DNA from: Macrostomum lignano
Lineage: Eukaryota
Length of the DNA: 64,000 nucleotides
NCBI GenBank assembly: GCA_002269645.1
Contig: NIVC01000600.1
Span: 238,638-302,637 of the forward strand
Reading direction: 5' to 3'
A program made the position numbers and the translations under genes. Within the stretch, counting starts at the first letter, position 1; each line of letters begins with the position of its first letter. The notes beneath the pieces are model-generated. The model was not told the DNA's origin. It saw nothing but the letters and a program-made list of their open reading frames with translations, and ran no database searches. Below are positions 27,937 through 49,500 of this stretch, one piece after another.

Positions 27937-27989
27937 CCCTTGCTCGGTAATTCATTTGTTAATCTCTTTGACTAAGTCCGTCTCACTGC

Positions 27990-28215
27990 AACTCTCCCAT
28001 CCCACTGCAACTCTCTCCTTCTCTCACTGCAACTCTCTCCTTCTCTCACTGCAACTCTCTCCTTCTCTCACTGCAACTCTCCCATCCCACTGCAACTCTC
28101 TCCTTCTCTCACTGCAACTCTCTCCTTCTCTCACTGCAACTCTCCCCATCTCACTGCAACACTCTCATCATCTCACTGCAACTCTCTCCTCCTCTCACTG
28201 CAACTCTCTCCTTCT
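27990..28215. repeat. ~20-bp tandem repeat (CTCACTGCAACTCTCTCCTT)n
   Basis: About 10 direct units. Confidence 0.9.
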
Positions 28216-28439
28216 TTCCCTGTCTGAGTTTGTAAAAAATGAACATCGTTTCGTTTAGTCTTCAAAACAACAGTATCTAACTACAATAGTATGTATTGAA
28301 ATCGAGTGCAGATCAAAGTCTGCAAGTTTTATTTTGTGCGCAGCAGAAAAAAAGCATACAGTAGAAAATCTAAGTAAATAATCAAGTAAATGGATGTCAG
28401 CTGTCTTACTGGAGGCTTCTACAATTCGGAATTTGCTTC

Positions 28440-29014
28440 TATTTATGGGGGCTATCGCTGACATGTTAAGGCTTACGGGGGGAATAGCTGAGATTTCAAG
28501 GCTAAAGTCAGAAGCTACATGTAGTTTATTGAAAACTTTTTATTACATTATTTGATGCCTCCTCATTGGAGGGATCGCTGATAAAAAAGCGTAATGTAAA
28601 AAATAAAAGAAGCTTCATGTCGAAGTTAAGAGATTCATTTGGGAATCCCTACGATGTCGAGGCTTGCAGGGAATCGCTATAATGCTGTAGTAGTGCTATA
28701 ATGACTCTCAGAGAGAATTACTGAAATTTCAATGCTTTAGGGTTAGGTTAGGGTTAGGGTTAGGGTTAGGGTTAGGCTAGGGTTAGGGTTAGAAGGTTGA
28801 CAGATATTTTTAGATTTCCAAGGCTTATTGGGGGCATTGCTGAGATGTCAAGGGGGGAAGTTGATGTGTTAAAGCTTGTGGGGGGGAATTATTGACATGT
28901 CAAGGCTTACAAGGTTTGACAGGAGATTTTTTAAGATTTCAAGGATATATGTAGCTTATTAAAAAACGTGTATTGCATTTCTTTGGCTCCCCAACGGGGG
29001 GCGTAGATTGCTAG
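28440..29014 (+). mobile_element. 3' part of a non-autonomous Helitron-like element (same family as 35684-38445); 5' boundary approximate
   Basis: Ends GCTCCCCAACGGGGGGC hairpin (28986-29002) + CTAG (29011-29014) followed by T; internal sequence is the reverse complement of ~35684-36200. Confidence 0.7.
28737..28792 (+). repeat. interstitial telomere-like (TTAGGG)n tract carried inside the Helitron-like element
   Basis: About 9 TTAGGG units with variants; a shorter (CCCTAA)n counterpart lies at 35886-35914. Confidence 0.9.
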
Positions 29015-29678: not shown

Positions 29679-30523
29679 CTAAAGTTCACCACTGCCCACC
29701 CTTGCCGCGTGGGTGCTGACGCCTGACTGAAGCCAATCGGGCAGCAACTGCTGCCACTTGTCGGGCAGGAAGGATGCACTCCAGGCAAAGCAGTGCGCAG
29801 CCATGGTGCAGCCGTAGAAGCAGCAGAGGCCGGCAAGCAGCAGCATTAGCGAGTTGAACACGGCAACCTCTATTGGCTCCAGAGCGGAGGCCGCAGTTAT
29901 CAGCAGGTACTGGTAGTAAATCTGGCGCACCCTGGCCTTGGCCGCGAGCCACAGTCCGGTCTGAGCAACGGGTTTGTGTTGTGGGAAGTTGAGTAATAGT
30001 CACAGTCTGCCATCCACACTTCCATCACCCACATCACTCCCGTCACCCACCTCACTCCCGTCACCAACCTCACTCCCGTCACCCACCTCACTCCCGTCAC
30101 CCACCTCACTCTCGTCACCCACCTCACTCCCGTCACCCACCTCACTCCCGTCACCCACCTCACTCCCGTCACCCACCTCACTCCCGTCACCCACCTCACT
30201 CCCGTCACCCACCTCACTCCCGTCATCCACCTCACTCCCGTCACCCACCTCACTCCCGTCACCCCCTCACTCCCGTCACTCCCCACTCCCGTCACCCACC
30301 TCAATCCCGTCACCCACCTCACTCCCGTCACCCACCTCACTCCAATCACTGCCTCACTCCAATCGCCCACTTCGGTCCAATCACCCACCTCGCTCCAATC
30401 ACCCACCTCATTCAACTCAGCCAGTTAAGCTTCTAAACAGCGCGCTTCAGAGCCTGCACTTACCCCACGTTTTCCGGACTTATCAAAAGCAGGCGCTGCA
30501 CAGTCTCCATAGCGGTCCGACAT
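29679..30523 (-). CDS. serine palmitoyltransferase small subunit (SPTSSA/B-like); exons 30523-30464 and 29960-29679, 113 aa
   Basis: QIYYQYLLITAASALEPIEVAVFNSLML matches the ssSPT signature (WFYYQYLLVTALYMLEPWERTVFNSML). ATG exon MSDRYGDCAAPAFDKSGKRG ends in GTAAGT, phase 0, matching the CTCAG acceptor. Confidence 0.85.
30010..30415. repeat. 18-bp minisatellite (CCCGTCACCCACCTCACT)n in the ssSPT intron
   Basis: About 20 units. Confidence 0.95.
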
Positions 30524-31284
30524 TTTGCCTTCTTTGTACCTCGCAGTAGTAGCTTGGTCTCTCAAAGCTAATACAGACAGCCGCCCATAGTTACTAAAAA
30601 ACTGGAAACCAGCTACTCATATAACCGTGCAAAAAGAAAGAGAGAGATGAGGAGAAGAGGTTTTAGCTGTACTTGCCTCGAGAACAATAGCAGCTGGATT
30701 GGTCTTGGGCAGGATTGGCCTAGCCGGGGCCGTACGCAGCTCTGCGTCCAGAAAGACTGCTCTCATTCACGATAGAGTAGATGCTTGGTGCAGGATTGAG
30801 AGGGGAGAGATGAGGAGGAGAAGCTGAGGAGAATGCTGGCGCGTGAGGAACGGTACCGATGGGGTGCACATGTTGGGGGATCTGGCTGGGAGACGCAGGA
30901 GTAGGGGGGGGGGGTGAAACAGAGACACACAGAGCTTAAAGAAAGTAGGCAGTGAGATCAAGCTGCCTGGCTGTCCAACCCGCTACTTTGCTCAACGCGC
31001 CATTCACAAGGGTGTGAGCCGGTGCTGGCTGGAATTCGCTAGACCGCTGGTTGCAGGCTTAACCTCGGGCGGGGGGGGAGGCTGGGCGAACTTTGAACAA
31101 AAGCAAAGCTGAGTGCCATGAAAGAATTCTACGCTGTGAACTGCCTGACAGTGACTGTTGTCTCAATTCACACAGTGTGCCATGCAGTTCTCGTTTAATT
31201 GTGAATGCACAATAGCCATTCTCCTGTTGGTCACTCCGGTTCTGTCACTCTTATTTTGTCACTCTTACTTCGTCATCTCATTCT

Positions 31285-31885
31285 TTGATTCTCAGCCACT
31301 CCTATCCTATCACTCTCGATCGGTCACTCTTAATCAGTCACTCTCGATCGGTCACTCTTAATCAGTCACTCTCGATCGGTCACTCTCAATCTGTCACTCT
31401 CAATCAGTCACTCTCAATCAGTCACTCTCAATCACTCTCAATAAGTCACTCTCAATCAGGTCACTCTCAATCAGTCACTCTCAATTGGTCACTCTTAATC
31501 GGTCACTCTCAAGCGGTCACTCTCAATCAGTCACACTTAATCGGTCAATCTCAATCGATCACTCTCAATCGATCCTCAGCCGGTCACTCTTAATCGGTCA
31601 CTCTCAATTCGTCACTCTCACTCTCAATCGGTCACTCTCAATCGGTCACTCTAAAGCGGTCACTCTCAATCGATCATTCTGAATCGGTCACTCTCAATCG
31701 ATCACTCTCAGCCGGTCACTCTCAATCGGTCACTCTCTATTCGTCACTCTCACTCTCAATCGGTCACTCTCAATCGGTCACTCTCAATCGGTCACTCTAA
31801 AGCGGTCACTCTCAATCGATCACTCTCAGCCGGTCACTCTCAATCGGTCACTCTCTATTCGTCACTCTCACTCTCAATCGGTCAC
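31285..31885. repeat. ~14-bp degenerate tandem repeat (CGGTCACTCTCAAT)n
   Basis: About 40 units. Confidence 0.93.
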
Positions 31886-34079
31886 TATTATTTCTTCATT
31901 TATATATTCTGCCAAACCGACCGCTAATTATGACTGCAATTCTCAAAGACTGGATTACAACGCATTTTTGAACCTGTGATTCTGTCACGAGATTAGATTC
32001 TTAACTATTGTAACAGCAATCACTCCTGTACAATCATTTTGATAGATAAATGCTTCCAATTTAGTGAAATTATACTCATACGAGTGCGCGGTGTTCTAGT
32101 GTGTGTTTGCCGCAGTACTCTCTCACTCTCACAGTACGTAATTTATTTGGTCAGGTTTGGTCCAGATTGTTTTCTTTTGTGAATAACAAGCCTCTAGCTC
32201 TGCTCGTTCGCCTCTATCTACTGCGAGTATTCGGCAGCTTCAGAGTGGCTATGATATCTGGAGAATTAAACGATTTAATTCTCCTCAAAAGTTAACTACT
32301 TTTTTCCATAGACTACGGACTGGCCACAAACACTGTATATTTAACATTGTAGAATTTTAATCGAATTTCATTTCATATAGGATAAAAGCCGTTTAATTCA
32401 TCATATAGTCTATGGTATAGGGATTAGAAATTAGAAAATCGGGACAAAATAAAGGTTCACTAAAGGGCAAAATAAGAAGCTAAAAGCAGGGGGCGAAATT
32501 TCAATTTAAAGATAGGACTCCTAAGTGAGAGAAATTAAAGAACGTCAAGAAGCGTAAGAAATCATAGATAAGAACCAGAGTATTGAGGTCGCCTAGTATA
32601 GAGTGCCAATAAGGATGAAAATCTGAAGCCGATTTTTAGAATCCACCCACCCCCTCCGGTCACCAAGCTTTTTAGTCTATGGCACAAGTTGTGTATCGAC
32701 GACGGCAACTGAGTCTGGTGACTGAGAGCGATGTTACTACATAACGCGTAGATTCTGCCGGGTTTTCAGAATTCTGACGCAAAAAACGCAAATTATACTA
32801 CTATTCGAAAATGAAGTAAGTAGTATACAAAAACGCTATCCTAAGCGTGATATACGGTAATATGTAATTGTAATAATCCATGTGCTCATATTAATTCCAT
32901 GTACATTAATCCCTATCTATCTCAAAATGTACATTAATCCCATGTACATTAATCCCTATCCCAAATGTCTATCCCCAATTCTATATGTACACTCACATTA
33001 ATCTACAGTGTCATCCCCAGACGGTCTGAGCGCGCACCAAAATTACAACTCGAAACCCTACTACATGTACAATCTCATACAAATGAGTCAACACCCAAGT
33101 TTTACAAACCACGTTATATACATATTCCTATTTATATGTCAATTATTCAAAATCTACATGTAGCTGATTACACTACTACCTTTAGTAGAGTTACAAATCA
33201 AGATTCTATTGAAAAAGACTGTATTCATATAGTTTTCACATTGGAAAAGCGTATATTTTCATTTCAATAATTGAAAAAGAGAGCAAAAACAGTAAGGAGA
33301 CAACAGCAAGTTGAGACTTAATTATAGCCTGTACTACCAAACCCTCCTGCACCGCGAATTGAGTGGCTGCCAGCGGCCTCCTCATCGCCATTCCCTCTAG
33401 TATATCCTCACCCCTCGAAGCCCCTATACTGAATGTTGAATCACCCTTTAACTCGGACCATAGTCAAATTCAACCCTGTTCGAAAACAGCCACCCCTCCG
33501 ATGTTTACCAGACACAGCGCAGACCCCATAACAAATCGAGCTAAATTTTAACACTCGCCCCTGTTTTCTCTGTCCCCCTTCTAAATGCCAAGGAATTTCG
33601 ACCCTCTCTCCATTTTCAGTGTACAGACAGATCTTTCCACAGCACAGATCCTATATTAAACTTCAAAACCCCTCTCTTCTCCGATTACGTCATCCATGCC
33701 GCCCCAGTTAGCAAGATACCAACTTTTAATGCACACATCAACCCGCGAGCAAATCCGAGTCAACCTCTACCTGCATTGACAAACCCCAGCTGCATTTGTA
33801 AATGTACACAGCCTATGAATCAGTGTCTCCTCCGCATACAATTCCGAGACTGAATTCTATGTATGTTCAAATAAATACTTTGACACTATAACCCATGCGG
33901 TATACTAGAAGTAGTGAAGTCCACCCGCCCAAAAACGGGCTGCTATGCCAATTCTATCGCCTCCCCTACCTTCTCACTTCAAGCTTTCAGACTCGGTCTT
34001 TGAGACGGTCGGTTTAATCTGTTAGAAGCAGGAATGAATCATGCACTGACCTCTCCATACAAAGTAAAGTTGGAATTTC

Positions 34080-35240
34080 AGACAAAAAATTTGGTTATTT
34101 TAAAAGCTAAATGACTAGAAATGCACATTTTTTCATTAAAATGCAGCTTTTTACAGTTTTTTTTTACGATTTTAACCTTAAAATGCAGACTTTGTTGATC
34201 AAAATCAGTAGTTTCATCACTAGAAACCATACTTTCAACAGCTAATTTGTCCAAATGTCGCTTTCAACTTGACCTTAGACTGCTTTTAAGCAGGAATGAA
34301 CCCCACACAAACATCCACAAGCCAGCCCAAAATCATCCAAAGACATGGCTATTGAAGCCTAAATTGCTAGAAATGCGCATTTTTTTTCATAAGAAAATAC
34401 AAATTTTCACAGTTTTTATGCATTTTTACGTTAAAATGCAGACTTTATTGATCAAAATCAGTAGTTTCATCACTAGAAACCATACTTTCAGCAACTAATT
34501 TGTCCAAATATCGCTTTCAACTTGACCTTAGACAGCTTTTAAGCAGGAATGAACCCCCCACGAACATACACAAGCTAGCCCAAAATCATCCAAAGACGGC
34601 TGTTGAAGACTAAATTGCTAGAAATGAGCATTTTTTCAAAAGAAAACACAAATTTTCACAGTTTTTACGCATTTTTTCGTTAAAATGCAGACTTTATTGA
34701 TCAAAATCAGTAATTCATCACTAAAAACCACAATTTTAACACAAAATTATCACAAATGCTACTTCTGGAACTCTGAGACAGCTTTGAGCAGGAATTATAA
34801 TCGCACACGGATTACCCGAGCCAGTCCAATATTCCACTGAAGCCAGGGTTTTTTAAAGCTGAATTGTTAGAATTGCTCATTCTTTCGTTTAATAAATGAC
34901 AATTTTCACAGTTTTTTTATTTTCTAACGTTAAAATGCGAAATGTATTGGTCAAACTTAGTAGTTTCATCCCAAAAGCCATAATTTCAACCGCTAATTTG
35001 TCCAAATGCTGATTTCAAAGTTGGCAAGAGACAGCTTTCGAGCAGGAATGAGTCACACACTGATCTCCATATGCGCACCCCGGCCCAAGTTGGAATTCCA
35101 CCCAAGACATTTTCATTGAAAGCTAAATTACTAGAAATTGCACATTTTCGTTTTAAAAAGGTCAATTTTCACAGTTTTTACTCTTTTTAACGTTAAAATG
35201 TTGACTTTATTGAACAAAATTAATCACTTCATCAGCAGAA
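34080..35240. repeat. ~250-bp tandem units (about 5 diverged copies) inside the left fold-back arm; mirrored at ~42310-43470
   Basis: AAAATGCAGACTTT..GATCAAAATCAGTAGTTTCATCACTAGAAACCA recurs at ~34180, 34435, 34685 and in diverged form at ~34930 and 35195. Confidence 0.8.
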
Positions 35241-35683
35241 ACCATAATTTTTACAACTTAATGCTGTTTCATCATTCAAATGTATGTATTTGGTACGTGT
35301 AATACCCCTCAAGAAGTCAGGGAAGGGATTATTCTTGAATATTGGGTTAAAACGTACAGTTTGCTATAAACCTAGCTATAATAATTTTAACATATACAGT
35401 CGGCGAAGCGGCCCGTTGATTTCGATTGACATTTAAACTGTCCCTCCCAGACCTCTCTCTCTCTCTCCTTCTGCACCCACCGAGAAAAGTGACTCATGCG
35501 GCAATCAGCTGGACAGGTTTTATTACTGAATTGGCAAAACAGCCAACACCCAATGGTCATATTAGACTCGTCTTCACAGCACAGACCCATGTAGAACAGA
35601 ACCACTCGTCCCTGTCTCTCTGACCTTACCATTTCTAACTGTCAAGGAATTCCGACCCTCCCTCTCCAATTTCAGTGTACAAA

Positions 35684-38445
35684 CTAGCAATCAGTGCCCC
35701 CCGTTGGGGAGCCAAAAAATGCAGTACAAGTTTTTTTAATAAACTACATGTAAGCGTCTCTTTGCATTATACCTTGTAAGCCTTGACATGTCAGAAAATC
35801 CCCCCACAAGCCTTAGCATATCAACCGCCTTGACATCTTAGCAATGCCCCATAAGCCTTGCAATCTTAAAAAATCTGTCAACCTTCTAACCCTAACCCTA
35901 GCCCTAACCCTAAAGCATTGACATTTCAGTAATTCTCTCCAACAGTCATTATAGCACTACAGCATTATAGCGATTCCCTGCAAGCCTCGACATCGTAGGG
36001 ATTCCCAAATGATCTCTTAACTTCGACATGAAGCTTCTTTTATTTTTTACATTAGGGCCTACGCTTTTTCTATCAGCGATCCCTCCCCTGAGGAGCGAAC
36101 AAATAATGTAATAAAAAGTTTTCAATAAACCACATGTAGCTTCTGACTTTAGCCTTGAAATCTCATTTATACCCCAGTGAGCCTTGACATCTCAGCTATT
36201 ACCCTCATAAGCCTTGACATGTCAGCAATGCCCCCCATAAACCTTGAAATCTGAAAAATCCCCTGCTAACCTTGAAACCCGATAAAATATAACCCTCAAC
36301 CCAAACCTGACCTAAACCTAACTTTAACCCAACATAAAGCCTTAAAATCTCAGCAATTCTTCTCCCCTAAGCCTTGACAATTTAGTGATTCTTTTTTTCA
36401 AGAATCACATCACTATAGCGATACCCTCCCCAAGCCTTGACATTGTAGCAATTCCCAAATGAATCTTTTAACTTCGACATGACTCTTCTTTTATGTATAC
36501 ATAGTGCTTCTTTTCTTTTTTACATGACTCTTCTTCTATCAGCGCCCCCCCGTGGCGAGCCAACAAAGAATGTAATAAAAAAATTGAGTAAAGTACATGT
36601 ACTTTGAAGTAGCTTCTGACTTTTGCTTTGACATCTCAGAAACCCCCCCCCGTAATCTCAGTTATTCTCCGTGAGCCTTGACATCTCAGTAAGTCTCCCC
36701 AGCACAGCACAATAGCCTCATTTAATTTTTACATGACACTTCTTTCATGTCTGACATTTTTTATTGTCACTTGATTTTTGATGTCAGTAAGATTTTTTTA
36801 CATGACACTTCTTTCATGTCTGACATTTTTTATTGTCACTTGATTTTTGATGTCAGTAAGATTTTTTTACATGACGCTTTCATGATTGTTTACATGACGC
36901 TTTCAAGATTGTTTACATGACGCTTCTATGATTGTTTACATGACGCTTCTATGATTGTTTACATGACGCTTCTATGATTTTTTACATGACGCTTCTATGA
37001 TTGTTTACATGGCACTTCTATGATTGTTTACATGGCACTTCTATGATTTTTTACATGACGCTTCTATGATTTTTTACATGACGCTTTCATGATTGTTTGC
37101 ATGACGCTTCTATGATTTTTTTACATGACGATTCTATGATTGTTTACATGACGCTTCTATGATTCTCTACATGACGCTTCTATGATTTTTTACATGACGC
37201 TTCTATGATTGTTTACATGACGCTTCTTTGATTCTCTACATGACGCTTCTATGATTTTTTACATGACGCTTCTATGATTGTTTACATGACGCTTCTATGA
37301 TTGTTTACATGACGCTTCTATGATTTTTTAAATGACGTTTTTTTGATATTTATCTGACGCTTCTATGATTTTTTAAATGACGCTTCTATGATTGTTTATA
37401 TGACGCTTTTACGATTTTTTACATGACGCTTCTATGATTTTTTACATGACGCTTCTATGCTTTTTACATGACGCTTCTATGATTTTTACATGATACTTCT
37501 ATGATTTTTTACATGAAGCTTCTATGATTGTTTACATGACGCTTCTATGATTGTTTACATGACGCTTCTATGATTTTTTACATGACGCTTCTATGATTGT
37601 TTGCATGACGTTTCTATGATTTTTTACATGACGCTTCTACGATTTTTTACATGACGCTTCTATGATTGTTTACATGACGCTTCTATGATTCTCTACATGA
37701 CGCTTCTATGATTTTTTACATGACACTTTTATGCTTTTTACATGATGCTTCCACGATTTTTTACATGACACTTCCACGATTTTTTACATGACGCTTCTAT
37801 GATTTTTTACATGACGCTTCTATGATTTTTTTAGTTTCCTTGGCGTTAAAAAGCTTTAATTAAAAAAACTCTACTCTCTAAAAATTCGAACCATCGTTTC
37901 TGCATTTAGCAGTTCAGTCTGTTTACCTCTAGGCTAGCTCTCATCGTTTTGATAACATGAATTCAGCACTTATAATTATAAGTTTCAAAACTCCAAGCAT
38001 AGAGTAAATCACACGAGGCAGTTATGACATAATCAATTTCTCAGTCAGTCAGTATCAGTTAACAATATGGTTGCGCAATCTAAATCAAGTCTGGTGCTAC
38101 GCTTCCACACTGCATTTTCAATACTGTGACGCAATTCAAGTTGGAGTTACAATTCAGTTATGATGTAATCCATTTCAGAATCAGAATTCAACCAGTCAGT
38201 TTTTTCTCTAGCATTCTTACAATGCATTTCAAGTCGAAAAGTTTGCTTGACCTTTGCAAAAAAGCATGTTTTTCGAATATTTAATGCCTTTAGCATCGAG
38301 CAATTTCTTAGCCACGATGCATGTACCGTCACGGGAAAATTTCTAATCGAACAGTGCAAGTTCGAACAAAATCGGTCCAGCCATTTTTTCTCTAATCTAT
38401 CACATATATATATATAGATAGACATCACATTTTTAGTATATAGGA
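35684..38445 (-). mobile_element. non-autonomous Helitron-like element (2762 bp) inserted in the left fold-back arm
   Basis: On the minus strand it begins TCCTATATACTAAAA and ends with a GC hairpin (35696-35712) + CTAG. No TSD. The right arm shows the exact empty site (ATCTG|TTTGTAC); its length equals the 2762-bp offset between the two symmetry axes. Confidence 0.85.
36740..37830. repeat. 23/24-bp minisatellite (ACATGACGCTTCTATGATTGTTT)n inside the Helitron-like element
   Basis: About 45 units. Confidence 0.95.
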
Positions 38446-41400
38446 CAGATATTTTCACAGCACAGACTCATATATTGAGCCTCCTCCAACCAAAACCCTA
38501 TCTTGATTACGTCATCCACCTCCCCATAGGAGCAGTTAGCAAGAAACAAAATTTTTCGATGCACATATGAACACTGTGGACCATGCAAAATCGCACATCT
38601 ACGGGTCGATTTTGATTGACAATTTAATACCTTTTGTTGATGCTGCTGTGTACAGTAGTCTTATTTCCGAAGCTCCTAGCAGTCATCTTTTAGATGTGGT
38701 GAATCAGTGTTGTTTTTGCCAACTTTACATCTTGATTCATCCTCCAAATTCTTCAACTCTGACCATCAATAATTTAACCCATGCAAGTAGATTTGCCAAT
38801 TCGCCAAATTAGCCAATACGAATGGGGCCAGAGGACCCACCCAAATCGAGCCCTTGTCTCTCTCAGGCCTCTCTCTCCTACACATACCCCAGAAAAGTGA
38901 CTCATGAGGCAATCAGTTTAACAGGTTCAGTATACTGAATTGGCAAAACAGCAAACACCCAATGGTCAATGGACTCGTCTTCGCAGCACAGACCATTTTG
39001 AATAAAGCCAAAACACACATACACCCCTATTCTCTGACCAAACCTTTCCATTTCTAGTTGTCAACGAAATTCGACCGGCCTCTCTCTCAATCCCAATGTA
39101 CATTTTGACGAAGCAAGCAGATCTTTTCACAGCACGGACCCAGCCTCCCCCAACCAAAGCCCTATCTCTGATTACGTCATCTATACATCCCCATAGAAGC
39201 AGTTAGCAAGAAAAAAATTTCGATGCACATATATGAACAATGCGAACCAAGCAAATCCGCGCGTCTACCAAAGCCAACCCTACCCTGCGTGCTGTAATTG
39301 CATTTGTCAATGTACACACCCTATGAATCAGTGTCTCCTTCTTTGGAACACACGAAGGCATTAGTCAGAAAGTTTGGATGCAATTAAAAACTCTCTCGAT
39401 GCTTTGCGTATAAACGAGTAATCGATTGAATCAATTGTACACTTGACACATTTAATTACGTGCTGCCATGCAACGGAAAGACAGGATAATGGGGTGGGTG
39501 GTCACGCAGCCTCATTCTCTCTTTCCTACTGATTTTTCATTATCTATCAATCTCAGCTCTTTCCGGGGCAACTCGCGCATGTGTGCATAGTTCCTCATCA
39601 GATTTACCACATTTTCATTTACATGTGATGTACATATGCAAGCGGCAGCCGATTTAAACCTGAGAAATGGTTGAAGTACTCCCCCGACTACGACTAAATG
39701 CACGTACGTTCAGTCAAATACAGGAAAATTTGACACCCGTAGTATGAAGATGTAATCTTCACGAAAGCTTCACATGTTTATCTTTCTCTGTGGAAATGAC
39801 GATAGTTTCTCAATAAAAATCTGTCATAGGCCCAATATAGCAGTTTAAATATTTTCACGAAAATGTCGCATTCTTCCAAGAACTGATTTTTGCAAACTCT
39901 ACTGTCAGTAGGAAGATGAGTTTTCATAGAGACATTTTGTAAAACATAGACTAAACTTTCAAATTATTCGTTTACACGACCAACTGTCTATATTAATGGT
40001 GGGGTTATTATTACTTTACAGAAAAACGCATGTCCTGTGTTACGACACTGCCTAGCAACCGTATAATTTTATTAATACATGAACTAGCACTCCTATTATA
40101 CATTCATTGAGAGGCGGCGGCAGCGGGCGGAGGCGGCAGTAGAGACAGGGACTGTGCTGCGCACAGTCACGGTCCGGCCACCCTCCGCCCGCTGCCGCCG
40201 CCTCTCAATGAATGTATAATAGGAGTGCTAGTTCATGTATTAATAAAATTATACGGTTGCTAGGCAGTGTCGTAACACAGGACATGCGTTTTTCTGTAAA
40301 GTAATAATAACCCCACCATTAATATAGACAGTTGGTCGTGTAAACGAATAATTTGAAAGTTTAGTCTATGTTTTACAAAATGTCTCTATGAAAACTCATC
40401 TTCCTACTGACAGTAGAGTTTGCAAAAATCAGTTCTTGGAAGAATGCGACATTTTCGTGAAAATATTTAAACTGCTATATTGGGCCTATGACAGATTTTT
40501 ATTGAGAAACTATCGTCATTTCCACAGAGAAAGATAAACATGTGAAGCTTTCGTGAAGATTACATCTTCATACTACGGGTGTCAAATTTTCCTGTATTTG
40601 ACTGAACGTACGTGCATTTAGTCGTAGTCGGGGGAGTACTTCAACCATTTCTCAGGTTTAAATCGGCTGCCGCTTGCATATGTACATCACATGTAAATGA
40701 AAATGTGGTAAATCTGATGAGGAACTATGCACACATGCGCGAGTTGCCCCGGAAAGAGCTGAGATTGATAGATAATGAAAAATCAGTAGGAAAGAGAGAA
40801 TGAGGCTGCGTGACCACCCACCCCATTATCCTGTCTTTCCGTTGCATGGCAGCACGTAATTAAATGTGTCAAGTGTACAATTGATTCAATCGATTACTCG
40901 TTTATACGCAAAGCATCGAGAGAGTTTTTAATTGCATCCAAACTTTCTGACTAATGCCTTCGTGTGTTCCAAAGAAGGAGACACTGATTCATAGGGTGTG
41001 TACATTGACAAATGCAATTACAGCACGCAGGGTAGGGTTGGCTTTGGTAGACGCGCGGATTTGCTTGGTTCGCATTGTTCATATATGTGCATCGAAATTT
41101 TTTTCTTGCTAACTGCTTCTATGGGGATGTATAGATGACGTAATCAGAGATAGGGCTTTGGTTGGGGGAGGCTGGGTCCGTGCTGTGAAAAGATCTGCTT
41201 GCTTCGTCAAAATGTACATTGGGATTGAGAGAGAGGCCGGTCGAATTTCGTTGACAACTAGAAATGGAAAGGTTTGGTCAGAGAATAGGGGTGTATGTGT
41301 GTTTTGGCTTTATTCAAAATGGTCTGTGCTGCGAAGACGAGTCCATTGACCATTGGGTGTTTGCTGTTTTGCCAATTCAGTATACTGAACCTGTTAAACT

Positions 41401-44400
41401 GATTGCCTCATGAGTCACTTTTCTGGGGTATGTGTAGGAGAGAGAGGCCTGAGAGAGACAAGGGCTCGATTTGGGTGGGTCCTCTGGCCCCATTCGTATT
41501 GGCTAATTTGGCGAATTGGCAAATCTACTTGCATGGGTTAAATTATTGATGGTCAGAGTTGAAGAATTTGGAGGATGAATCAAGATGTAAAGTTGGCAAA
41601 AACAACACTGATTCACCACATCTAAAAGATGACTGCTAGGAGCTTCGGAAATAAGACTACTGTACACAGCAGCATCAACAAAAGGTATTAAATTGTCAAT
41701 CAAAATCGACCCGTAGATGTGCGATTTTGCATGGTCCACAGTGTTCATATGTGCATCGAAAAATTTTGTTTCTTGCTAACTGCTCCTATGGGGAGGTGGA
41801 TGACGTAATCAAGATAGGGTTTTGGTTGGAGGAGGCTCAATATATGAGTCTGTGCTGTGAAAATATCTGTTTGTACACTGAAATTGGAGAGGGAGGGTCG
41901 GAATTCCTTGACAGTTAGAAATGGTAAGGTCAGAGAGACAGGGACGAGTGGTTCTGTTCTACATGGGTCTGTGCTGTGAAGACGAGTCTAATATGACCAT
42001 TGGGTGTTGGCTGTTTTGCCAATTCAGTAATAAAACCTGTCCAGCTGATTGCCGCATGAGTCACTTTTCTCGGTGGGTGCAGAAGGAGAGAGAGAGAGGT
42101 CTGGGAGGGACAGTTTAAATGTCAATCGAAATCAACGGGCCGCTTCGCCGACTGTATATGTTAAAATTATTATAGCTAGGTTTATAGCAAACTGTACGTT
42201 TTAACCCAATATTCAAGAATAATCCCTTCCCTGACTTCTTGAGGGGTATTACACGTACCAAATACATACATTTGAATGATGAAACAGCATTAAGTTGTAA
42301 AAATTATGGTTTCTGCTGATGAAGTGATTAATTTTGTTCAATAAAGTCAACATTTTAACGTTAAAAAGAGTAAAAACTGTGAAAATTGACCTTTTTAAAA
42401 CGAAAATGTGCAATTTCTAGTAATTTAGCTTTCAATGAAAATGTCTTGGGTGGAATTCCAACTTGGGCCGGGGTGCGCATATGGAGATCAGTGTGTGACT
42501 CATTCCTGCTCGAAAGCTGTCTCTTGCCAACTTTGAAATCAGCATTTGGACAAATTAGCGGTTGAAATTATGGCTTTTGGGATGAAACTACTAAGTTTGA
42601 CCAATACATTTCGCATTTTAACGTTAGAAAATAAAAAAACTGTGAAAATTGTCATTTATTAAACGAAAGAATGAGCAATTCTAACAATTCAGCTTTAAAA
42701 AACCCTGGCTTCAGTGGAATATTGGACTGGCTCGGGTAATCCGTGTGCGATTATAATTCCTGCTCAAAGCTGTCTCAGAGTTCCAGAAGTAGCATTTGTG
42801 ATAATTTTGTGTTAAAATTGTGGTTTTTAGTGATGAATTACTGATTTTGATCAATAAAGTCTGCATTTTAACGAAAAAATGCGTAAAAACTGTGAAAATT
42901 TGTGTTTTCTTTTGAAAAAATGCTCATTTCTAGCAATTTAGTCTTCAACAGCCGTCTTTGGATGATTTTGGGCTAGCTTGTGTATGTTCGTGGGGGTTCA
43001 TTCCTGCTTAAAAGCTGTCTAAGGTCAAGTTGAAAGCGATATTTGGACAAATTAGTTGCTGAAAGTATGGTTTCTAGTGATGAAACTACTGATTTTGATC
43101 AATAAAGTCTGCATTTTAACGTAAAAATGCATAAAAACTGTGAAAATTTGTATTTTCTTATGAAAAAAATGCGCATTTCTAGCAATTTAGGCTTCAATAG
43201 CCATGTCTTTGGATGATTTTGGGCTGGCTTGTGGATGTTTGTGTGGGGTTCATTCCTGCTTAAAAGCAGTCTAAGGTCAAGTTGAAAGCGACATTTGGAC
43301 AAATTAGCTGTTGAAAGTATGGTTTCTAGTGATGAAACTACTGATTTTGATCAACAAAGTCTGCATTTTAAGGTTAAAATCGTAAAAAAAAACTGTAAAA
43401 AGCTGCATTTTAATGAAAAAATGTGCATTTCTAGTCATTTAGCTTTTAAAATAACCAAATTTTTTGTCTGAAATTCCAACTTTACTTTGTATGGAGAGGT
43501 CAGTGCATGATTCATTCCTGCTTCTAACAGATTAAACCGACCGTCTCAAAGACCGAGTCTGAAAGCTTGAAGTGAGAAGGTAGGGGAGGCGATAGAATTG
43601 GCATAGCAGCCCGTTTTTGGGCGGGTGGACTTCACTACTTCTAGTATACCGCATGGGTTATAGTGTCAAAGTATTTATTTGAACATACATAGAATTCAGT
43701 CTCGGAATTGTATGCGGAGGAGACACTGATTCATAGGCTGTGTACATTTACAAATGCAGCTGGGGTTTGTCAATGCAGGTAGAGGTTGACTCGGATTTGC
43801 TCGCGGGGTTGATGTGTGCATTAAAAGTTGGTATCTTGCTAACTGGGGCGGCATGGATGACGTAATCGGAGAAGAGAGGGGTTTTGAAGTTTAATATAGG
43901 ATCTGTGCTGTGGAAAGATCTGTCTGTACACTGAAAATGGAGAGAGGGTCGAAATTCCTTGGCATTTAGAAGGGGGGACAGAGAAAACAGGGGCGAGTGT
44001 TAAAATTTAGCTCGATTTGTTATGGGGTCTGCGCTGTGTCTGGTAAACATCGGAGGGGTGGCTGTTTTCGAACAGGGTTGAATTTGACTATGGTCCGAGT
44101 TAAAGGGTGATTCAACATTCAGTATAGGGGCTTCGAGGGGTGAGGATATACTAGAGGGAATGGCGATGAGGAGGCCGCTGGCAGCCACTCAATTCGCGGT
44201 GCAGGAGGGTTTGGTAGTACAGGCTATAATTAAGTCTCAACTTGCTGTTGTCTCCTTACTGTTTTTGCTCTCTTTTTCAATTATTGAAATGAAAATATAC
44301 GCTTTTCCAATGTGAAAACTATATGAATACAGTCTTTTTCAATAGAATCTTGATTTGTAACTCTACTAAAGGTAGTAGTGTAATCAGCTACATGTAGATT

Positions 44401-45186
44401 TTGAATAATTGACATATAAATAGGAATATGTATATAACGTGGTTTGTAAAACTTGGGTGTTGACTCATTTGTATGAGATTGTACATGTAGTAGGGTTTCG
44501 AGTTGTAATTTTGGTGCGCGCTCAGACCGTCTGGGGATGACACTGTAGATTAATGTGAGTGTACATATAGAATTGGGGATAGACATTTGGGATAGGGATT
44601 AATGTACATGGGATTAATGTACATTTTGAGATAGATAGGGATTAATGTACATGGAATTAATATGAGCACATGGATTATTACAATTACATATTACCGTATA
44701 TCACGCTTAGGATAGCGTTTTTGTATACTACTTACTTCATTTTCGAATAGTAGTATAATTTGCGTTTTTTGCGTCAGAATTCTGAAAACCCGGCAGAATC
44801 TACGCGTTATGTAGTGATGTTGTCTTGCTTATTTGATACATGCATTTTCTAAGTGTGAAATGTCTTATATTTCTGAGCATCGGCTTTGTACACCATTCTA
44901 GCCACAACTTGTGCCATAGACCAAAAAGCCCGGTGACCGGAGGGGGCGGGCGGACTCCAAAAATCGGATCCAACACAACTAACACATCTAACACTTCCAA
45001 CAGCAACCGACAGATACAAAACTTACTATTACACACGACCCCTAGCCGCCCCGTAGGGGCTTGGGGCACAGAAAGCTTTTTTATGTTACTAAAAATGAGC
45101 CGAGTTTACAACTTTTCAGTAAGTGATACTTTTGAAACTGTTGCTAAAAATGCAGAGATAATAAAACAGCATATATTGAATGGAAT

Positions 45187-45504
45187 TGTAACGGTTTCGT
45201 AATTTCCATTATCAACTTTTCCAAATGTATGTAATTTATTTATTAACTGTTTCTTCTGTGTATAAATCAAAGTTAAAATGCATAAATTTTGTTTTATCGG
45301 ATTCTTCTTGGCACAAATTTAAATGCTGTTATCTATTTAAGTTATACCTTAGTGAGACGTAGGCACGTGGTGTCTGGCGTTGTTGTCGTCCAATTCCTCG
45401 CTAGCTCGCTAGCATTTCTCGCTAGCCAACAATAGCAGCCCAGCTCGTCTACGCGAACTCGCTCCGTCAGAACGCTACATAATTTTTGGAGGTCCCACCG
45501 AGAC
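45187..45504 (+). mobile_element. element D: 5' LTR (45187-45479) and tRNA-Gln-type PBS (45487-45504) of a truncated LTR element
   Basis: TGTAAC...GCTACA termini followed by TAATTTT and TGGAGGTCCCACCGAGAC, complementary to the tRNA-Gln 3' end. No second LTR or coding region was found in the window. Confidence 0.6.
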
Positions 45505-45755
45505 GAGATAATAATATATTGATTAATCTTGGTTTCATTTGTCTAAAATATTCTGAGGCAGCGCTGGATTCTGCCGATGTACTTATGACTAAGTGACTAA
45601 GTGGTTTCGTGCCCCGTGTGCCCCACCACCCCAATGCGTTAATAATTATATATTGAGCATCGTTTGTGTTAGCATCGTTGATGAATAATACATCGAAACT
45701 GAGACATCGTTTATTTTACCAAATCATCGCGCTACTCAGTTGAAACGACGCGACA

Positions 45756-46576
45756 ATGGCGTCGCAAGCAAATAGGCAGAGTCATGAACTCGATTTGGAC
45801 GACGCCGACATGGCCGAAGCATGGATGCAGCGACTCTCAGCCACAGCGCGCATCAAAAAGCTAACGGACTCGGATGAGGCTCGGGACAAAACTGACCTAT
45901 TCTTATCTAAGGCCGGCCTTCAGGCAATTCGCACGCTATCTCTAATGGCAGCGCCAAAAAAACTTGATGAGATGAAATTAGATGACATCAAAAAGCTCGT
46001 TGACGAGACGATCCGGCCGAAAAAGTCACTTGTAATTGCCGAACGCACCAGATTCCTCAGCCTGAAGCAGGTATCGGGTGAGAGCGTCATAGCCTACTAC
46101 CGGAGGCTGAGGGCTGCTACGTCACACTGCGAGTTTGAAAAGCTGGGCAGCAAGCAGATAAAGGAGGACGACATGATTACCATGCGATTAATTGACGGCC
46201 TCAACTCCTCAGAGCACAAAAAAAGAATCTTGGAGCGCCTACAAAACGAAGATGGAGAAATGCCACTCGACAGGATTTTGCAGAATTTGCAGCAGCTTGA
46301 GCAGATCCGTGACTACAACACGCCGGCCCCTGCTGACATCGCCTTCGCCGGTCAACAGAGGGGAGTCTCCTCACCTGCCAAGCCGCAGCCGTCAATCAAA
46401 TGCGGGTTCTGTGGCGCCAATCACTCTAGAGGCAACTGCCCAGCCTACGGCAAAAAATGCTTCAAGTGCCAAAAAAGAAATCACTTTGCGGCTGTCTGCA
46501 GATCGCGAGCTGTCCATCAGGAAATCGCACTCGATGCAGAAGAAGCAGACGTGTATACTCTCAGTCCCAACAGAGC
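45756..46576 (+). pseudogene. gag: element A gag, interrupted by element B
   Basis: AERTRFLSLKQVSGESVIAYYRRLR (MHR-like), CGFCGANHSRGNCPAYGKKCFKCQKRNHFAAVC; the frame resumes after B as AKVGLFKTIKIN..QVDTGA. Confidence 0.88.
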
Positions 46577-49500
46577 TGTTATGTTTTCTTTTACACCGAA
46601 GAAAGACGGAAGATAGTGTTTGAGCGTTTGCGAGCTTATGCCACTCGAGAGCATAGCCGTTTCAGAAACTTAATATATTTCTTTGGCTCGCGAGCCGTCT
46701 CAAGCATTTAATACTGTACCGAGTATCTAGAGTTTCAACCCTAGACACTTTAGAAGCAGAAAGCAAACGAGGCCGAAGTCTATAAGAAGTTAGAAGTCAC
46801 GTCACAACATCCCTCTTCCTTTCAATCTTGAGCCTGATACCTCTCCGGCGGTCTTCGCGTTCGCTGAGGGTATCTGCGATCCGCCATCGGTTGATCCTCA
46901 GCACTTGGAGGTTCTCTCACTGGCTCATTCGTTGCCTCGGCTCTGTCCCTGACATGGTCACGGTGCACGACCAGATCTCGTCCTTGCTCGTCCCGCACTC
47001 GTCTCAACTGTTCGCCGACAGCTTCGCGCAGCACTCCTTCCCTCCACTCCTTGTTAAACGGATCCTGGACCCAGACTGGGCTGTAGGCTTGGTCAATCCG
47101 CTTGTCTTGAAAGGACCGACGGTGCAGCAGTGAGAGTCTCGTGTTGAACTCGCGCCCAAACATTTCTCGGCACGGCGCGACTCCGTTGGCTCTTGGACAG
47201 ACTCGCACCGCGTACAAAGCCTGTTGCATCCGAACCTCCGGATCTGGGTCATTCAGCTGCTTCAGCTTGGTCTTCAGCTTTTTCACTGCAGCCTCTGCTA
47301 CGCCATTTGATGCGGGGTGGTAGCGGGGAGACTTCAGGTGTAACACTCCCATCCGCTTCAGCCAGGCCTCCGTCTCATGCGCCACAAACTGTCGTCCGTT
47401 GTCAGTGACTAGTACATCTGGGATACCAAAGTTGCAAAATGTTCTGCGGAGTACTCTGATGACCGACGTTGCATCGATTTCGCGCACCCATTCGGCAGCG
47501 ATGAATCCCGTCTTGGCGTCTGAAACCACCAGAAAGTTGCTTCCATCCAGTTGTCCCAGGTCAGCGTGCACTTGGCACCAAGCCTCCTTTGGTACTGGCC
47601 ATGGTTTGAGCACCGATTTCTGGGATGGTCTCATGCGCTGGCACGTGTGGCATTCCGAAACGCACTTTTCTATCTCTGTCTCCATTAGCGGCCACCAGAC
47701 ATACTGGCGGGCCCACGCCTTTATGGCTTGCATTCCGGGATGGGAACAGTGGAGAAATTGGATGACTTGCGCTCGGAACTTCACCGGGATGACGATCCGA
47801 TGGTCCAGTAGCAGTAGATGGTCGCTGCAATTCAGTCTGCACTGTACTCTTCTGTATGAGTCCGGCACGTCCTCACCAGATCGCAACCTCTGTAGAACGT
47901 CTTGGATCTCCTTGTCCTCCTTGGACGCCTGCTCCATCTGATCCTTCGTGACTGGTCCATCTTCTGACAGGGCGATGTCCACCGCAGCAACTTCGTTAAC
48001 CGCTTCAGTCGCCGTTTTGTCGCTCCAGTTATTTCCGTCAGTTGGTAGTCTCGACAACGCGTCGGCATGAGGAATTTCGTGCGTTCTTTTGCCTCTGACT
48101 AGGTACTGGTACGTAGCCAGCAACTCAGCCCAGCGCTGAACTCTCTTACTTGCTCTCTCGGGCAGGTCTTTGTGTGATGCGAATAAGAATTCTAGAGGCT
48201 TGTGATCGGTCACAATCACAAAACTCCGATAAGCTAGGAATCGATTTAGCTTCTTGACGCACCAGACCACTCCGAGGGCTTCTCGTTCTAGCTGGCTGTA
48301 TCGCGACTCCGCAGGTGTGAGTTTCTTGGACACAAACGCTACAGGCCTTCCATTCTGCTCCAGCACTCCTCCAATGCCGTAGGGCGATGCATCTGTAGTC
48401 AGAGTTAGCTCCTTACTTGGATCGTACGGCGCTAGCACCTGCCTTGATGTAATGTCCTGCTTCAATTGCATCACGGCCTTCGTGTGTTCTTGTTGCCATG
48501 TCCAGTTGACATCTTTCTTCAGCAAGTTATACAGAATGGCAGTCTTCGTGGCCACTTGCGGGATGAACGGCGCATAGAAATTTATCAGTCCCAGAAATGT
48601 TCTCAGCTCTTCCTGGTTTCTTGGATCTTCCATGCTTTGTATTGCCGTCACCTTATCCTCGTTCATGCAGCATCCCTCCTTTGAGATCTTAAGGGCTAGA
48701 AATTCGACCTCTTCCTTGTCGAACTGGCACTTCTTAGCATTCAGTGTGATGTCATTTTCTTGCAGCCTTTTAAGTATTATTTCCGTCTTCTCAGCTAAAT
48801 TTTCCCGGTTTTTTCCACAGACTAGAATGTCGTCAATGAACACCACCACTCCGAGGACATCCCGAAGCAACTCGCATAGTGTGTTCTGAAACAATCCAGG
48901 AGCAGATGACAGTCCGTATGGTAATACCCTGTACCGAAAGTAACCAAAAGGTGTTGCGATAGTAGTGATATCCCGTGAGTCCTCGCACAGCTCCAGGTTA
49001 TGGTATGCATCCTTCAAATCTAGCACAGTGAAACGGCTGCATCCTGAGATGGCTCGTTGCACATCCGCCTTTGTTGGCATATCGATTGGCGGTAGCCGTA
49101 AAAACTGGTTGACCCGTCTATAGTCTCCACACAGCCTGATGTCTCCCGAGCTTTTGGGAACGACCACAATCGGACTAGCGAACACCGGCTGTTCTACTTT
49201 TTCAATTATCTTCCGCTTTTCCAGATCTTCTAATCTTTCCTTAACGGCTGGTACCAGCGAAAATGGGAGTGGTCGGGCCTTCGATACCACCGGTCTCGTG
49301 TTTTCTCGTACTTCCAACTTCACTTGAATTCGCTTATAAGCCACTGAAGCTTGACAACGGCGTTTGGTAACTTCGATACCCAAACTACTAAACCAATTTC
49401 GGCCAATAACCGGCTTTGCGTTCATGTCCATGACTACCACAGGTAATGAGCACTTACTTTCATCTTCGGTCTGAACTCGAACATCTGCGGTACCACATAC

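What the first reader, a model, noticed from the sequence alone, without database searches (positions are those of the whole stretch)
32730..44821. A 9.3-kb non-coding near-perfect palindrome that integrated as one unit (6-bp TSD)
Seen: excluding the Helitron, the element is two ~4.63-kb arms that differ by eye only at a few simple-repeat lengths, a 48-bp spacer, an exact GATGTT duplication at both ends, and no credible protein-coding ORF. Established: long TIRs with 6-bp TSDs typify Polintons/Mavericks (usually AG termini; here AC), fold-back elements are known from Drosophila (FB, Galileo), and long perfect palindromes are usually unstable. Inference: a snap-back defective genome of a Polinton-like or other linear-DNA element, or a new fold-back family mobilised in trans. 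It could also generate kilobase dsRNA.
Basis: partly seen in the sequence, partly recalled or inferred. Interest (0 to 1): 0.82.

Follow-up and report, generated by a model that had tools for sequence, protein, structure and literature searches.

The report
Non-coding foldback transposon, 9.3-kb palindrome
Two identical, mirror-image 4.6-kb halves sit in an animal genome as one inserted, gene-less mobile element; it has the build of a 'foldback' transposon of an unidentified family, and nothing tested here links it to virus-like Polintons beyond the 6-bp target duplication.

Summary
Window 32736-44815 is a palindrome of two arms (4636 and 4634 nt) with 0 substitutions and 5 length differences, all in homopolymer or CT runs. 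The arms flank a 48-nt centre and are bounded by an exact GATGTT duplication. A 2762-bp Helitron/Helentron-like element interrupts the left arm only. No reading frame of an arm matches any protein family.

The arm layout matches published foldback transposons. It has a unique terminal domain with three exact subterminal 15-mers, a ~250-bp tandem array, an inner domain with a thrice-repeated module, and a tiny non-coding middle.

The 48-nt centre is itself an imperfect hairpin on nearly the same axis as the arms. This favours origin by fold-back copying of one end of a parent element.

Polinton membership is not supported. The termini are ACTACA..TGTAGT, not AG..CT, there are no gene remnants, and the arms are three times the longest reported Maverick terminal repeat. 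IS3EU/GingerRoot termini (TA..TA) do not fit either.

No second copy or partner could be found, because the source species is absent from every collection searched.

Verdict: a real, young, non-autonomous foldback-type element of unknown superfamily. Interest is moderate.

The parts
32730..32735 (.). Left copy of the 6-bp target-site duplication GATGTT
   Evidence: Direct reading; identical to 44816-44821.
32736..35683 (+). Left arm, outer segment (terminus ACTACATAACGCG...), up to the Helitron-like insert
   Evidence: 100% complementary to 41871-44815 apart from 5 run-length indels.
32899..32956 (+). Subterminal cluster of three exact copies of ATGTACATTAATCCC; mirror cluster at 44595-44652. 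Candidate binding sites for the mobilising enzyme (inference).
   Evidence: Six matches in the window, all in the element; 0.15 expected by chance; TRF 15-bp array.
33552..33833 (+). Copy 1 (partial) of a ~400-bp module repeated three times per arm. The other copies are 35457-35683 plus 38446-38600, and 38867-39337. Each holds the motif GATTACGTCATCCA. Mirror copies in the right arm are 43718-43999, 41713-42094 and 40976-41446.
   Evidence: Arm self-comparison, 76-95% identity; motif 3 times per arm, 0.31 expected by chance. Coordinates accurate to ±2 nt.
34069..35255 (+). About 250-bp tandem repeat, roughly 4.7 units, inside the left arm (mirror: 42296-43482)
   Evidence: TRF period 252-253; the repeat finder families D1-D5; blastn self-hits.
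35684..38445 (-). Non-autonomous Helitron/Helentron-like insert, present in the left arm only. It contains three ~465-bp modules, TTAGGG-like runs and a 23-bp x42 satellite at 36863-37831. It is not part of the palindrome.
   Evidence: Boundaries come from the uninterrupted right arm. No target duplication; 3' hairpin plus CTAG; relative at 28443-29014 with the same 3' end. Internal repeats. Layout as in HINEs.
38446..40133 (+). Left arm, inner segment, ending in a GC-rich (GGC)n-like tract
   Evidence: 100% complementary to 40182-41870.
40134..40181 (.). 48-nt centre. It is an imperfect hairpin with a perfect core GACTGTGC-tgc-GCACAGTC (40150-40168), flanked by 16 and 13 nt that pair only partly.
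   Evidence: Reading. DNA fold is continuous with the arms. Spacer alone: z = -2.79, 2 of 200 shuffles as stable. An 8-bp stem within ±2 nt of the axis occurred in 48 of 20000 shuffles.
40182..44815 (-). Right arm, uninterrupted (4634 nt)
44816..44821 (.). Right copy of the target-site duplication GATGTT
32624..32693 (.). Left repeat of an outer, unrelated inverted repeat whose partner is 44903-44972. Without the palindrome and one GATGTT copy, the two flanks form a ~263-bp MITE-like hairpin element with the insertion in its loop.
   Evidence: I19, 87% over 70 nt; blastn 89% over 65 nt, E = 4e-18; reading.

Best explanation
This is one copy of a non-autonomous, foldback-type class II (DNA) transposon.

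Shown:
- It consists of two inverted, sequence-identical copies of a single 4.63-kb non-coding end, joined through a 48-nt imperfect hairpin.
- It is bounded by a 6-bp target duplication.
- It lies in the loop of an older MITE-like inverted repeat.
- One arm was later hit by a Helitron/Helentron-like element.

Inferred, step 1: the palindrome arose at some earlier locus. A strand copied inward from one terminus of a parent element folded back on a pre-existing imperfect internal hairpin (the present 48-nt centre). That strand then primed on itself and copied the same end back out. This produced two perfect arms around an imperfect centre.

Inferred, step 2: the product carries two identical termini and two identical sets of subterminal 15-mer sites. 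An enzyme encoded elsewhere recognised them, made 6-bp staggered cuts in the target and inserted the element here as a unit.

Inferred, step 3: the event is recent, or the arms are homogenised by conversion. With 0 substitutions in 4634 nt, the 95% upper bound on arm divergence is about 0.065%.

The superfamily of the mobilising enzyme is unknown.
For: - Exact 6-bp duplication at the exact ends of complementarity.
- The flanks on the two sides differ from each other and together reconstitute an outer 65-70-nt inverted repeat. The palindrome is therefore an insertion, not a local fold-back of host DNA.
- An insert is present in one arm only, so the arms are two physical DNA segments.
- No coding capacity.
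- The arm layout is terminal domain, then ~250-bp tandem repeats, then inner domain, then a tiny non-coding middle. Tetris and other foldback elements are described with the same layout (PMC4079207).
- Three exact subterminal 15-mers per end are found nowhere else in the window.
- The centre is an imperfect hairpin nearly co-axial with the arms. It holds at least 6 mismatched or unpaired positions within 29 nt, while 9.2 kb of arms hold no substitution. This pattern is expected if the centre was a pre-existing imperfect inverted repeat used as the turn-around point. It is not expected from uniform decay of a once-perfect palindrome.
Against: - Only one copy is available. No second copy, empty site or coding partner was found in the window or in any collection.
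- The 6-bp duplication differs from those of described foldback elements: FB and Tetris 8-10 bp, and Galileo, which by my own knowledge makes 7 bp.
- The termini AC..GT match neither superfamily documented here with 6-bp duplications.
- The last two nucleotides of the centre are unpaired in the predicted fold. Simple self-priming therefore requires that the pre-existing hairpin reached a few bp into what now counts as arm.
- Perfect arm identity could be inflated by assembly polishing.
Confidence: 0.6

Rival explanations
1. It is a terminal-repeat-only or snap-back derivative of a Polinton/Maverick (self-synthesising, virus-like) element, inserted by that element's retroviral-type integrase.
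For: A 6-bp target duplication and long terminal inverted repeats are hallmarks of Mavericks. An imperfect hairpin at the centre of perfect arms is what self-priming of a displaced single strand would leave, and protein-primed linear replicons do produce single strands (established knowledge for adenovirus-type replication).
Against: The termini are ACTACA..TGTAGT. The motifs quoted for vertebrate Mavericks are 5'-(AG)3 or (AGT)2. The ACT/AGT resemblance here is on the wrong strand polarity. No remnant of pPolB, integrase, ATPase, protease or capsid genes appears in six frames. The arms are 4.6 kb against a reported maximum TIR of 1447 bp. No Polinton gene occurs among the window's ORFs of 130 aa or more. 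The termini are absent from IMG/VR. A 6-bp TSD is not exclusive to Polintons.
Confidence: 0.12
2. It is an assembly or library artefact, such as a fold-back chimeric long read or a collapsed or mis-joined repeat, and not a structure in the genome.
For: Long-read libraries do produce palindromic chimeras. The only arm differences are run-length differences typical of long-read error. Perfect identity may be a polishing effect. No read data could be examined.
Against: A fold-back chimera copies one molecule, so it cannot carry a 2.76-kb insert in one arm only. It would not end in a precise 6-bp direct duplication. It would not sit between two different flanks that together form one small inverted-repeat element. 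The structure is internal to the window, with about 32 kb on the left and 19 kb on the right.
Confidence: 0.05
3. It formed in situ. An ordinary element with short terminal repeats inserted here, making the duplication, and one half was later overwritten by an inverted copy of the other through template switching during replication or repair. On this view the palindrome never moved as a unit.
For: Strand switching at a hairpin explains the imperfect centre equally well. With a single copy, nothing shows that the palindromic form itself transposed.
Against: It needs a second, precise switch back at the far terminus to preserve the right end and the duplication. That is less parsimonious than formation elsewhere followed by one insertion. 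No trace of a different right half remains.
Confidence: 0.13
4. It is an internal-deletion derivative of a parent that already had ~4.6-kb terminal inverted repeats around a coding middle. On this view the 48 nt are simply what is left of the middle.
For: [quoted passage not shown]
Against: A leftover middle has no reason to be a hairpin co-axial with the arms. An 8-bp perfect stem within ±2 nt of the axis occurred in 48 of 20000 shuffles.
Confidence: 0.1

Closest known systems
Foldback-type DNA transposons (Drosophila FB; Tetris of D. virilis; sea-urchin TU, Chironomus TFB1 and plant FARE as listed in PMC4079207)
   Same: The element is almost entirely two long inverted repeats. Each repeat has a unique terminal domain, an array of ~220-250-bp tandem repeats and an inner domain. 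The middle is short and non-coding, there is no transposase, and a target duplication is present.
   Different: The duplication is 6 bp, not 8-10 bp. The arms are sequence-identical over 4.6 kb. The middle is only 48 nt and is itself a hairpin. No sequence relationship could be tested.
Galileo (P superfamily, Drosophila)
   Same: Long terminal repeats with internal tandem repeats that carry extra transposase-binding sites (as cited). Many non-autonomous copies consist of little more than the repeats (PMC4168063, listed).
   Different: Galileo makes 7-bp duplications and its terminal repeats reach about 1.2 kb (my own knowledge, not checked here). Here the values are 6 bp and 4.6 kb.
Polinton/Maverick
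   Same: 6-bp target duplication and terminal inverted repeats.
   Different: The terminal motif, gene content and repeat length all differ.
IS3EU/GingerRoot
   Same: 6-bp target duplication.
   Different: Their termini are TA..TA, occasionally TG..CA; here they are AC..GT. No transposase remnant is present.
Replicated form of a hairpin-ended linear DNA (for example the poxvirus concatemer junction) and snap-back defective genomes of linear DNA viruses
   Same: Perfect long inverted repeats surround a short, incompletely paired hairpin sequence. The comparison rests on established knowledge and was not tested here.
   Different: Here the structure is integrated with a target duplication, is GC-rich at the centre, and has no viral gene.
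HINE/Helentron non-autonomous elements (for the insert in the left arm only)
   Same: No target duplication, insertion at a T-rich site, a 3' palindrome, a microsatellite and a central satellite-like array.
   Different: No clear subterminal inverted repeats were found between the two ends. The ends TC...CTAG also fit a canonical Helitron.

Membership tests
Foldback-type transposons (structural class) | Long terminal inverted repeats make up most or all of the element | tested here: met
   9270 of 9318 nt are arms.
Foldback-type transposons (structural class) | Tandem subrepeats inside the inverted repeats, between a terminal and an inner domain | tested here: met
   About 250 bp x 4.7 at 1334-2520 nt from each terminus; layout as described for Tetris.
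Foldback-type transposons (structural class) | Short or absent non-coding middle domain; non-autonomous | tested here: met
   48-nt centre; no Pfam match in six frames.
FB/Tetris lineage (Mutator-related foldbacks) | 8-10-bp target duplication | tested here: not met
   The duplication is exactly 6 bp, against 8-10 bp.
Any family of mobile elements | Multiple copies with the same termini and different target duplications | not testable with these tools
   The window holds only this copy. The species is absent from the collections.
Polinton/Maverick | 6-bp target duplication | tested here: met
   GATGTT on both sides; family feature.
Polinton/Maverick | Terminal inverted repeats (46-1447 bp in vertebrate elements) | tested here: inconclusive
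   Repeats are present but 4.6 kb long, three times the reported maximum.
Polinton/Maverick | 5'-AG-type end motifs ((AG)3 or (AGT)2 ... (CT)3 or (ACT)2) | tested here: not met
   The ends are ACTACA...TGTAGT against the motifs.
Polinton/Maverick | pPolB, retroviral-type integrase and capsid-module genes, or their remnants | tested here: not met
   Six-frame Pfam scan found no match apart from one chance-level, sub-threshold line unrelated to these genes. The ORFs are 103 aa or shorter.
IS3EU/GingerRoot | 6-bp target duplication with TA..TA (rarely TG..CA) termini | tested here: not met
   The duplication length fits but the termini are AC..GT.
Repbase rule for placing a non-autonomous DNA transposon in a superfamily | Same duplication length and terminal positions 1-11 alignable (1 mismatch or fewer) with a classified element | not testable with these tools
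   The rule is quoted. No Repbase or Dfam library was available.
Helitron/Helentron (insert 35684-38445 only) | No target duplication; 3' hairpin a few nt before CTRR; insertion at AT or TT | tested here: met
   The empty site in the right arm shows no duplication beyond a 2-bp ambiguity. CCCCAACGGGG is followed by 11 nt and then CTAG. One boundary choice puts the insertion between T and T.
Helitron/Helentron (insert 35684-38445 only) | Rep/helicase gene | tested here: not met
   The longest ORF in the insert is 103 aa, so the insert is non-autonomous.

The most novel reading that the evidence does not exclude
The element is the visible product of a so-far undescribed lineage of animal mobile DNA that moves or replicates through a single-stranded or hairpin-ended linear intermediate. 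This could be a Polinton-like or other self-priming replicon with AC..GT ends and a 6-bp-cutting integrase. Its imperfect central hairpin would be the fossil of the turn-around or telomere, giving direct sequence evidence for self-primed replication of such elements in an unsampled metazoan lineage.
Probability: 0.08. Interest if true: 0.7.

Novelty: new member of a known kind. Interest (0 to 1): 0.4.

Why it matters
Long near-perfect palindromes are fragile, so a 9.3-kb one with identical arms marks very recent activity of a DNA transposon in a poorly sampled animal lineage. If other copies exist, three things follow.
- The family would add a 6-bp-duplicating member to the foldback class, whose known members belong to the Mutator and P superfamilies.
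- The imperfect central hairpin would give a readable record of how such palindromic elements are made.
- Loci like this are natural candidates for hairpin-RNA and small-RNA production and for inversion breakpoints.

On present evidence it is a single copy of unknown family, so the value is as a lead.

Tried and rejected
- Exact look-up of the 101-aa arm ORF and of the neighbouring intact 1241-aa Gypsy polyprotein in public assemblies: neither is on record.
- Homologue search with a host-like ORF: none found. With the Gypsy polyprotein, the best identity was only 36%. With the arm ORF, no hit. The source species and its close relatives are therefore not in the collections, and other copies cannot be fetched.
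- Exact-pattern scans for the terminus and for a conserved internal module in IMG/VR, JGI metagenomes and prokaryotic genomes: no hits.
- Full-text search of papers for the terminal and subterminal motifs: no hits. A literature search for foldback elements with 6-bp duplications returned no such report.
- Rfam: only sub-threshold miRNA-hairpin look-alikes at the palindrome centre. Nothing at gathering level anywhere in the window and no tRNA. A Dada-like RNA-gene target is therefore not supported.
- Decay of a once-perfect palindrome as the source of the centre was considered and rejected. It is incompatible with 0 substitutions in 9.2 kb of arms.
- Two independent head-to-head insertions were considered and rejected. 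The inner ends do not resemble the outer termini, and there is one duplication, not two.
- Shifted or shorter duplication assignments that would give TG..CA or AG..CT ends were considered and rejected. None is possible with the flanking bases.
Full report
**1. The observation**

An inverted-repeat scan of 31000-46500 returns seven abutting blocks, each 100% complementary. Together they pair 32736-35684 and 38445-40133 with 40182-44815, with 48 nt between the innermost arms.

I removed the insert and aligned the left arm to the reverse complement of the right arm. The arms are 4636 and 4634 nt, with no substitution and five indels. Four indels are single bases in C or T homopolymer runs and one is a CT unit in a (CT)n run.

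The ends read gatgtt|ACTACATAACGCG... and ...CGCGTTATGTAGT|gatgtt. The neighbouring bases allow neither a longer nor a shifted duplication, so the target-site duplication is exactly GATGTT. The chance of this at fixed boundaries is 1/4096. The element is 9318 nt without the insert and 12080 nt with it.

The longest ORF in the arms is 101 aa. A six-frame translation of the right arm plus centre, with stops marked X, matches no Pfam family. The one line returned, at E = 0.21 over 11 residues, is noise. The 101-aa ORF has no homologue in the 5.8-billion-cluster collection.

**2. The insert in the left arm**

The uninterrupted right arm supplies the empty site. The insert therefore occupies 35684-38445, with a 2-bp 'AC' ambiguity and no target duplication.

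On the minus strand it begins TC and ends with a CCCCAACGGGG hairpin, 11 nt, then CTAG. A second partial copy on the plus strand at 28443-29014 is 81% identical over 581 nt. It ends at the same hairpin and CTAG and is again followed by TTTG.

Inside are three ~465-bp modules that each resemble the 3' end, TTAGGG-like runs and a 23-bp x42 satellite. This is the build described for non-autonomous Helitron/Helentron elements (HINEs): no duplication, T-rich targets, a 3' palindrome, a microsatellite and a central satellite-like array (PMC7492417).

The insert matters for the main question because it is present in one arm only. The arms are therefore two physical stretches of DNA, not one stretch read twice.

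**3. The surroundings**

The window is TE-dense animal DNA.
- Gypsy-type protease/RT/RNase H/integrase ORFs lie at 5946-10114, 46822-50547 (uninterrupted 1241 aa), 50813-51592 and 53601-56396.
- Several minisatellites fill 19.9-30.4 kb.
- The best database match to the 1241-aa polyprotein is 36% identical.
- A host-like ORF at 60218-61081 has no homologue.
- Exact look-ups fail.

The source species is not in any collection I could reach. None of the ORFs of 130 aa or more that I scanned against Pfam is a DDE transposase or a Polinton gene; the others looked repeat-derived or were not scanned.

Immediately outside the duplication, 32624-32693 and 44903-44972 form a separate inverted repeat. It is 87% complementary over 70 nt by the repeat scan and 89% over 65 nt by blastn (E = 4e-18), and it is unrelated to the arms. 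Without the palindrome and one GATGTT, the flanks make a ~263-bp MITE-like hairpin element. The insertion point lies in its 123-nt loop.

The palindrome is therefore a discrete insertion between two different flanks. A local fold-back duplication of host DNA would not produce this, and neither would a chimeric read.

**4. Anatomy of an arm** (distances from the outer terminus)

| Distance from terminus (nt) | Feature |
|---|---|
| 1 to ~150 | Unique terminal sequence |
| 164-221 | Three exact copies of ATGTACATTAATCCC. Six matches in the window, all in the element; 0.15 expected by chance |
| 817-1098, 2722-3103, 3370-3840 | Three diverged copies (76-95%) of one module. Each keeps GATTACGTCATCCA (three per arm; 0.31 expected) |
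| 1334-2520 | About 250-bp tandem repeat, roughly 4.7 units |
| Inner end | GC-rich, (GGC)n-like |

This is the layout published for foldback transposons. Tetris has a terminal domain, ~220-bp tandem repeats, an inner domain and a non-coding middle. It has no ORF, and its autonomous partner has not been found (PMC4079207). [quoted passage not shown] By analogy, I take the subterminal 15-mers to be candidate binding sites. That is an inference.

**5. The centre**

The 48 nt are not arbitrary. Folded as DNA, the centre continues the stem of the arms. There is a perfect 8-bp stem with a 3-nt loop (40150-40168) whose axis lies 1.5 nt from the axis of the arms. It is flanked by 16 and 13 nt that pair only in part.

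An 8-bp perfect stem within ±2 nt of the axis occurred in 48 of 20000 shuffles of the spacer. The spacer alone folds better than all but 2 of 200 shuffles.

The structure therefore has three zones: a perfect tip, an imperfect collar with at least 6 unpaired or mismatched positions in 29 nt, and 4.63 kb of flawless arms.
- Uniform decay of a once-perfect palindrome cannot give this pattern.
- Repair of a broken hairpin tip would destroy the tip rather than the collar.
- The pattern is what remains if a pre-existing imperfect inverted repeat served as the turn-around, with a nascent strand folding back and copying itself.

One reservation applies. The last two nucleotides of the centre are unpaired in the predicted fold. 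The original hairpin must therefore have reached a few base pairs into what now counts as arm.

**6. Most likely mechanism**

Shown: a gene-less element made of two identical inverted copies of one end, with a 6-bp duplication, inserted in a MITE-like loop and later hit by a Helitron-like element.

Inferred:
- (a) The palindrome was generated by fold-back copying of one end of a parent element at the internal hairpin, at an earlier locus.
- (b) It has two identical termini and two identical sets of subterminal sites. An enzyme encoded elsewhere that makes 6-bp staggered cuts inserted it here in one piece.
- (c) It is young, or its arms are kept alike by conversion. With 0 substitutions in 4634 nt, the 95% upper bound on divergence is about 0.065%.

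Because the insert lies 1689 nt from the centre, a perfect 2 x 1689-nt palindrome remains. Such palindromes are known to be fragile (established knowledge), which again argues for youth.

**7. Comparison with known families**

The element works like, and is built like, a foldback transposon. It does not pass as a member of the FB/Tetris lineage, whose duplications are 8-10 bp.

Two groups that make 6-bp duplications are documented in what I read.
- Polinton/Maverick has AG-type end motifs, 46-1447-bp terminal repeats and eight core genes.
- IS3EU/GingerRoot has TA..TA termini.

The termini here are ACTACA..TGTAGT. The ACT/AGT triplets recall the Maverick motif but on the opposite strand polarity, which is not equivalent. 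No gene remnant is present. The Polinton reading therefore keeps only the duplication length and the snap-back logic. I give it about 0.12.

By my own recollection, some hAT and Dada elements also make 6-bp duplications. Dada targets small-RNA genes, and none is present here. The Repbase rule for placing non-autonomous elements, which requires the same duplication length and terminal positions 1-11 alignable, could not be applied without that library.

**8. Rivals**

- Artefact (0.05). It is contradicted by the one-arm insert, the precise duplication and the two different flanks. No reads were available to check.
- In-situ conversion of an ordinary element (0.13). It explains the centre equally well but needs a second precise switch at the far terminus.
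- Internal deletion of a parent with long terminal repeats (0.10). This is the usual story for foldbacks, but it does not explain a co-axial hairpin centre.

**9. Novelty and verdict**

This is a real and unusually clean foldback-type element of unknown superfamily. It is a new member of a known structural kind. Its 6-bp duplication was not found reported for foldbacks in the searchable literature, which is not proof of absence.

Everything beyond structure rests on one copy. Interest is 0.4. It would rise if a genome-wide census finds a family and a partner, most of all if the partner is a self-synthesising element.

The direct functional test of mobility is outside what this report may propose. 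The census, the presence/absence allele and the identity of any coding relative are the descriptive substitutes.

Noticed in passing
window 32629-32693 vs 44903-44967: The two repeats of the outer MITE-like element differ at 7 positions. All 7 are A on the left and G on the reverse-complemented right, a one-directional transition pattern. Three are in CpG context. This suggests strand-specific deamination or editing rather than random drift.
   Followed up: partly
window 32624-32735 + 44822-44972: The palindrome is inserted in the loop of another hairpin-forming inverted repeat. With one case, this cannot be distinguished from coincidence. It would be worth checking at other copies for a preference for hairpin or cruciform targets.
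   Followed up: no
window 28443-29014 (+) and 35684-38445 (-): Two copies of a Helitron/Helentron-like non-autonomous family, 81% identical over 581 nt. Both have the same 3' hairpin plus CTAG, both are followed by TTTG, and both contain TTAGGG-like runs. The larger copy carries three tandem 3'-end-like modules and a 23-bp x42 satellite (36863-37831).
   Followed up: partly
window 33683, 38505, 39170 (+) and mirror sites 41132, 41797, 43854 (-): The motif GATTACGTCATCCA, which contains a TTACGTCA core, is conserved in all three diverged internal modules of each arm (6 matches; 0.31 expected by chance). It is a possible protein-binding site.
   Followed up: partly
window 1558-10114 (+): A Gypsy-type element whose first ORF is 1545 aa with no Pfam match. 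That ORF has a CCHC-like knuckle, a long Thr/Pro-rich stretch and a hydrophobic C-terminal segment. It is followed by protease and RT/RNase H/integrase ORFs. The large first ORF is unusual and may combine gag with an envelope-like part.
   Followed up: no
window 46822-50547 (-): An uninterrupted 1241-aa Gypsy-type polyprotein ORF (protease, RT, RNase H, integrase) lies 2 kb right of the palindrome. Its best database identity is only 36%, so the retrotransposon lineage and the host are poorly sampled.
   Followed up: partly
window 19918-20667, 22724-24876, 25804-26276, 27981-28222, 30017-30410: A run of minisatellites, for example 30 bp x 72.6 and 18 bp x 22. They produce long spurious ORFs in several frames and on both strands.
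   Followed up: partly
window 60218-63995 (-): Three ORFs (287, 168 and 198 aa) share a repeated motif (…LYEMT…GPVL[IV]…) and look like exons of a repeat-domain host gene. They have no Pfam match and no homologue in the protein collection.
   Followed up: partly
window 1-12000 and 32000-44800: Strong strand compositional skew. GC skew is about -0.24 to -0.31 over the first 12 kb. Within each arm C is 24% against G at 15%, and the sign flips at the palindrome centre.
   Followed up: no
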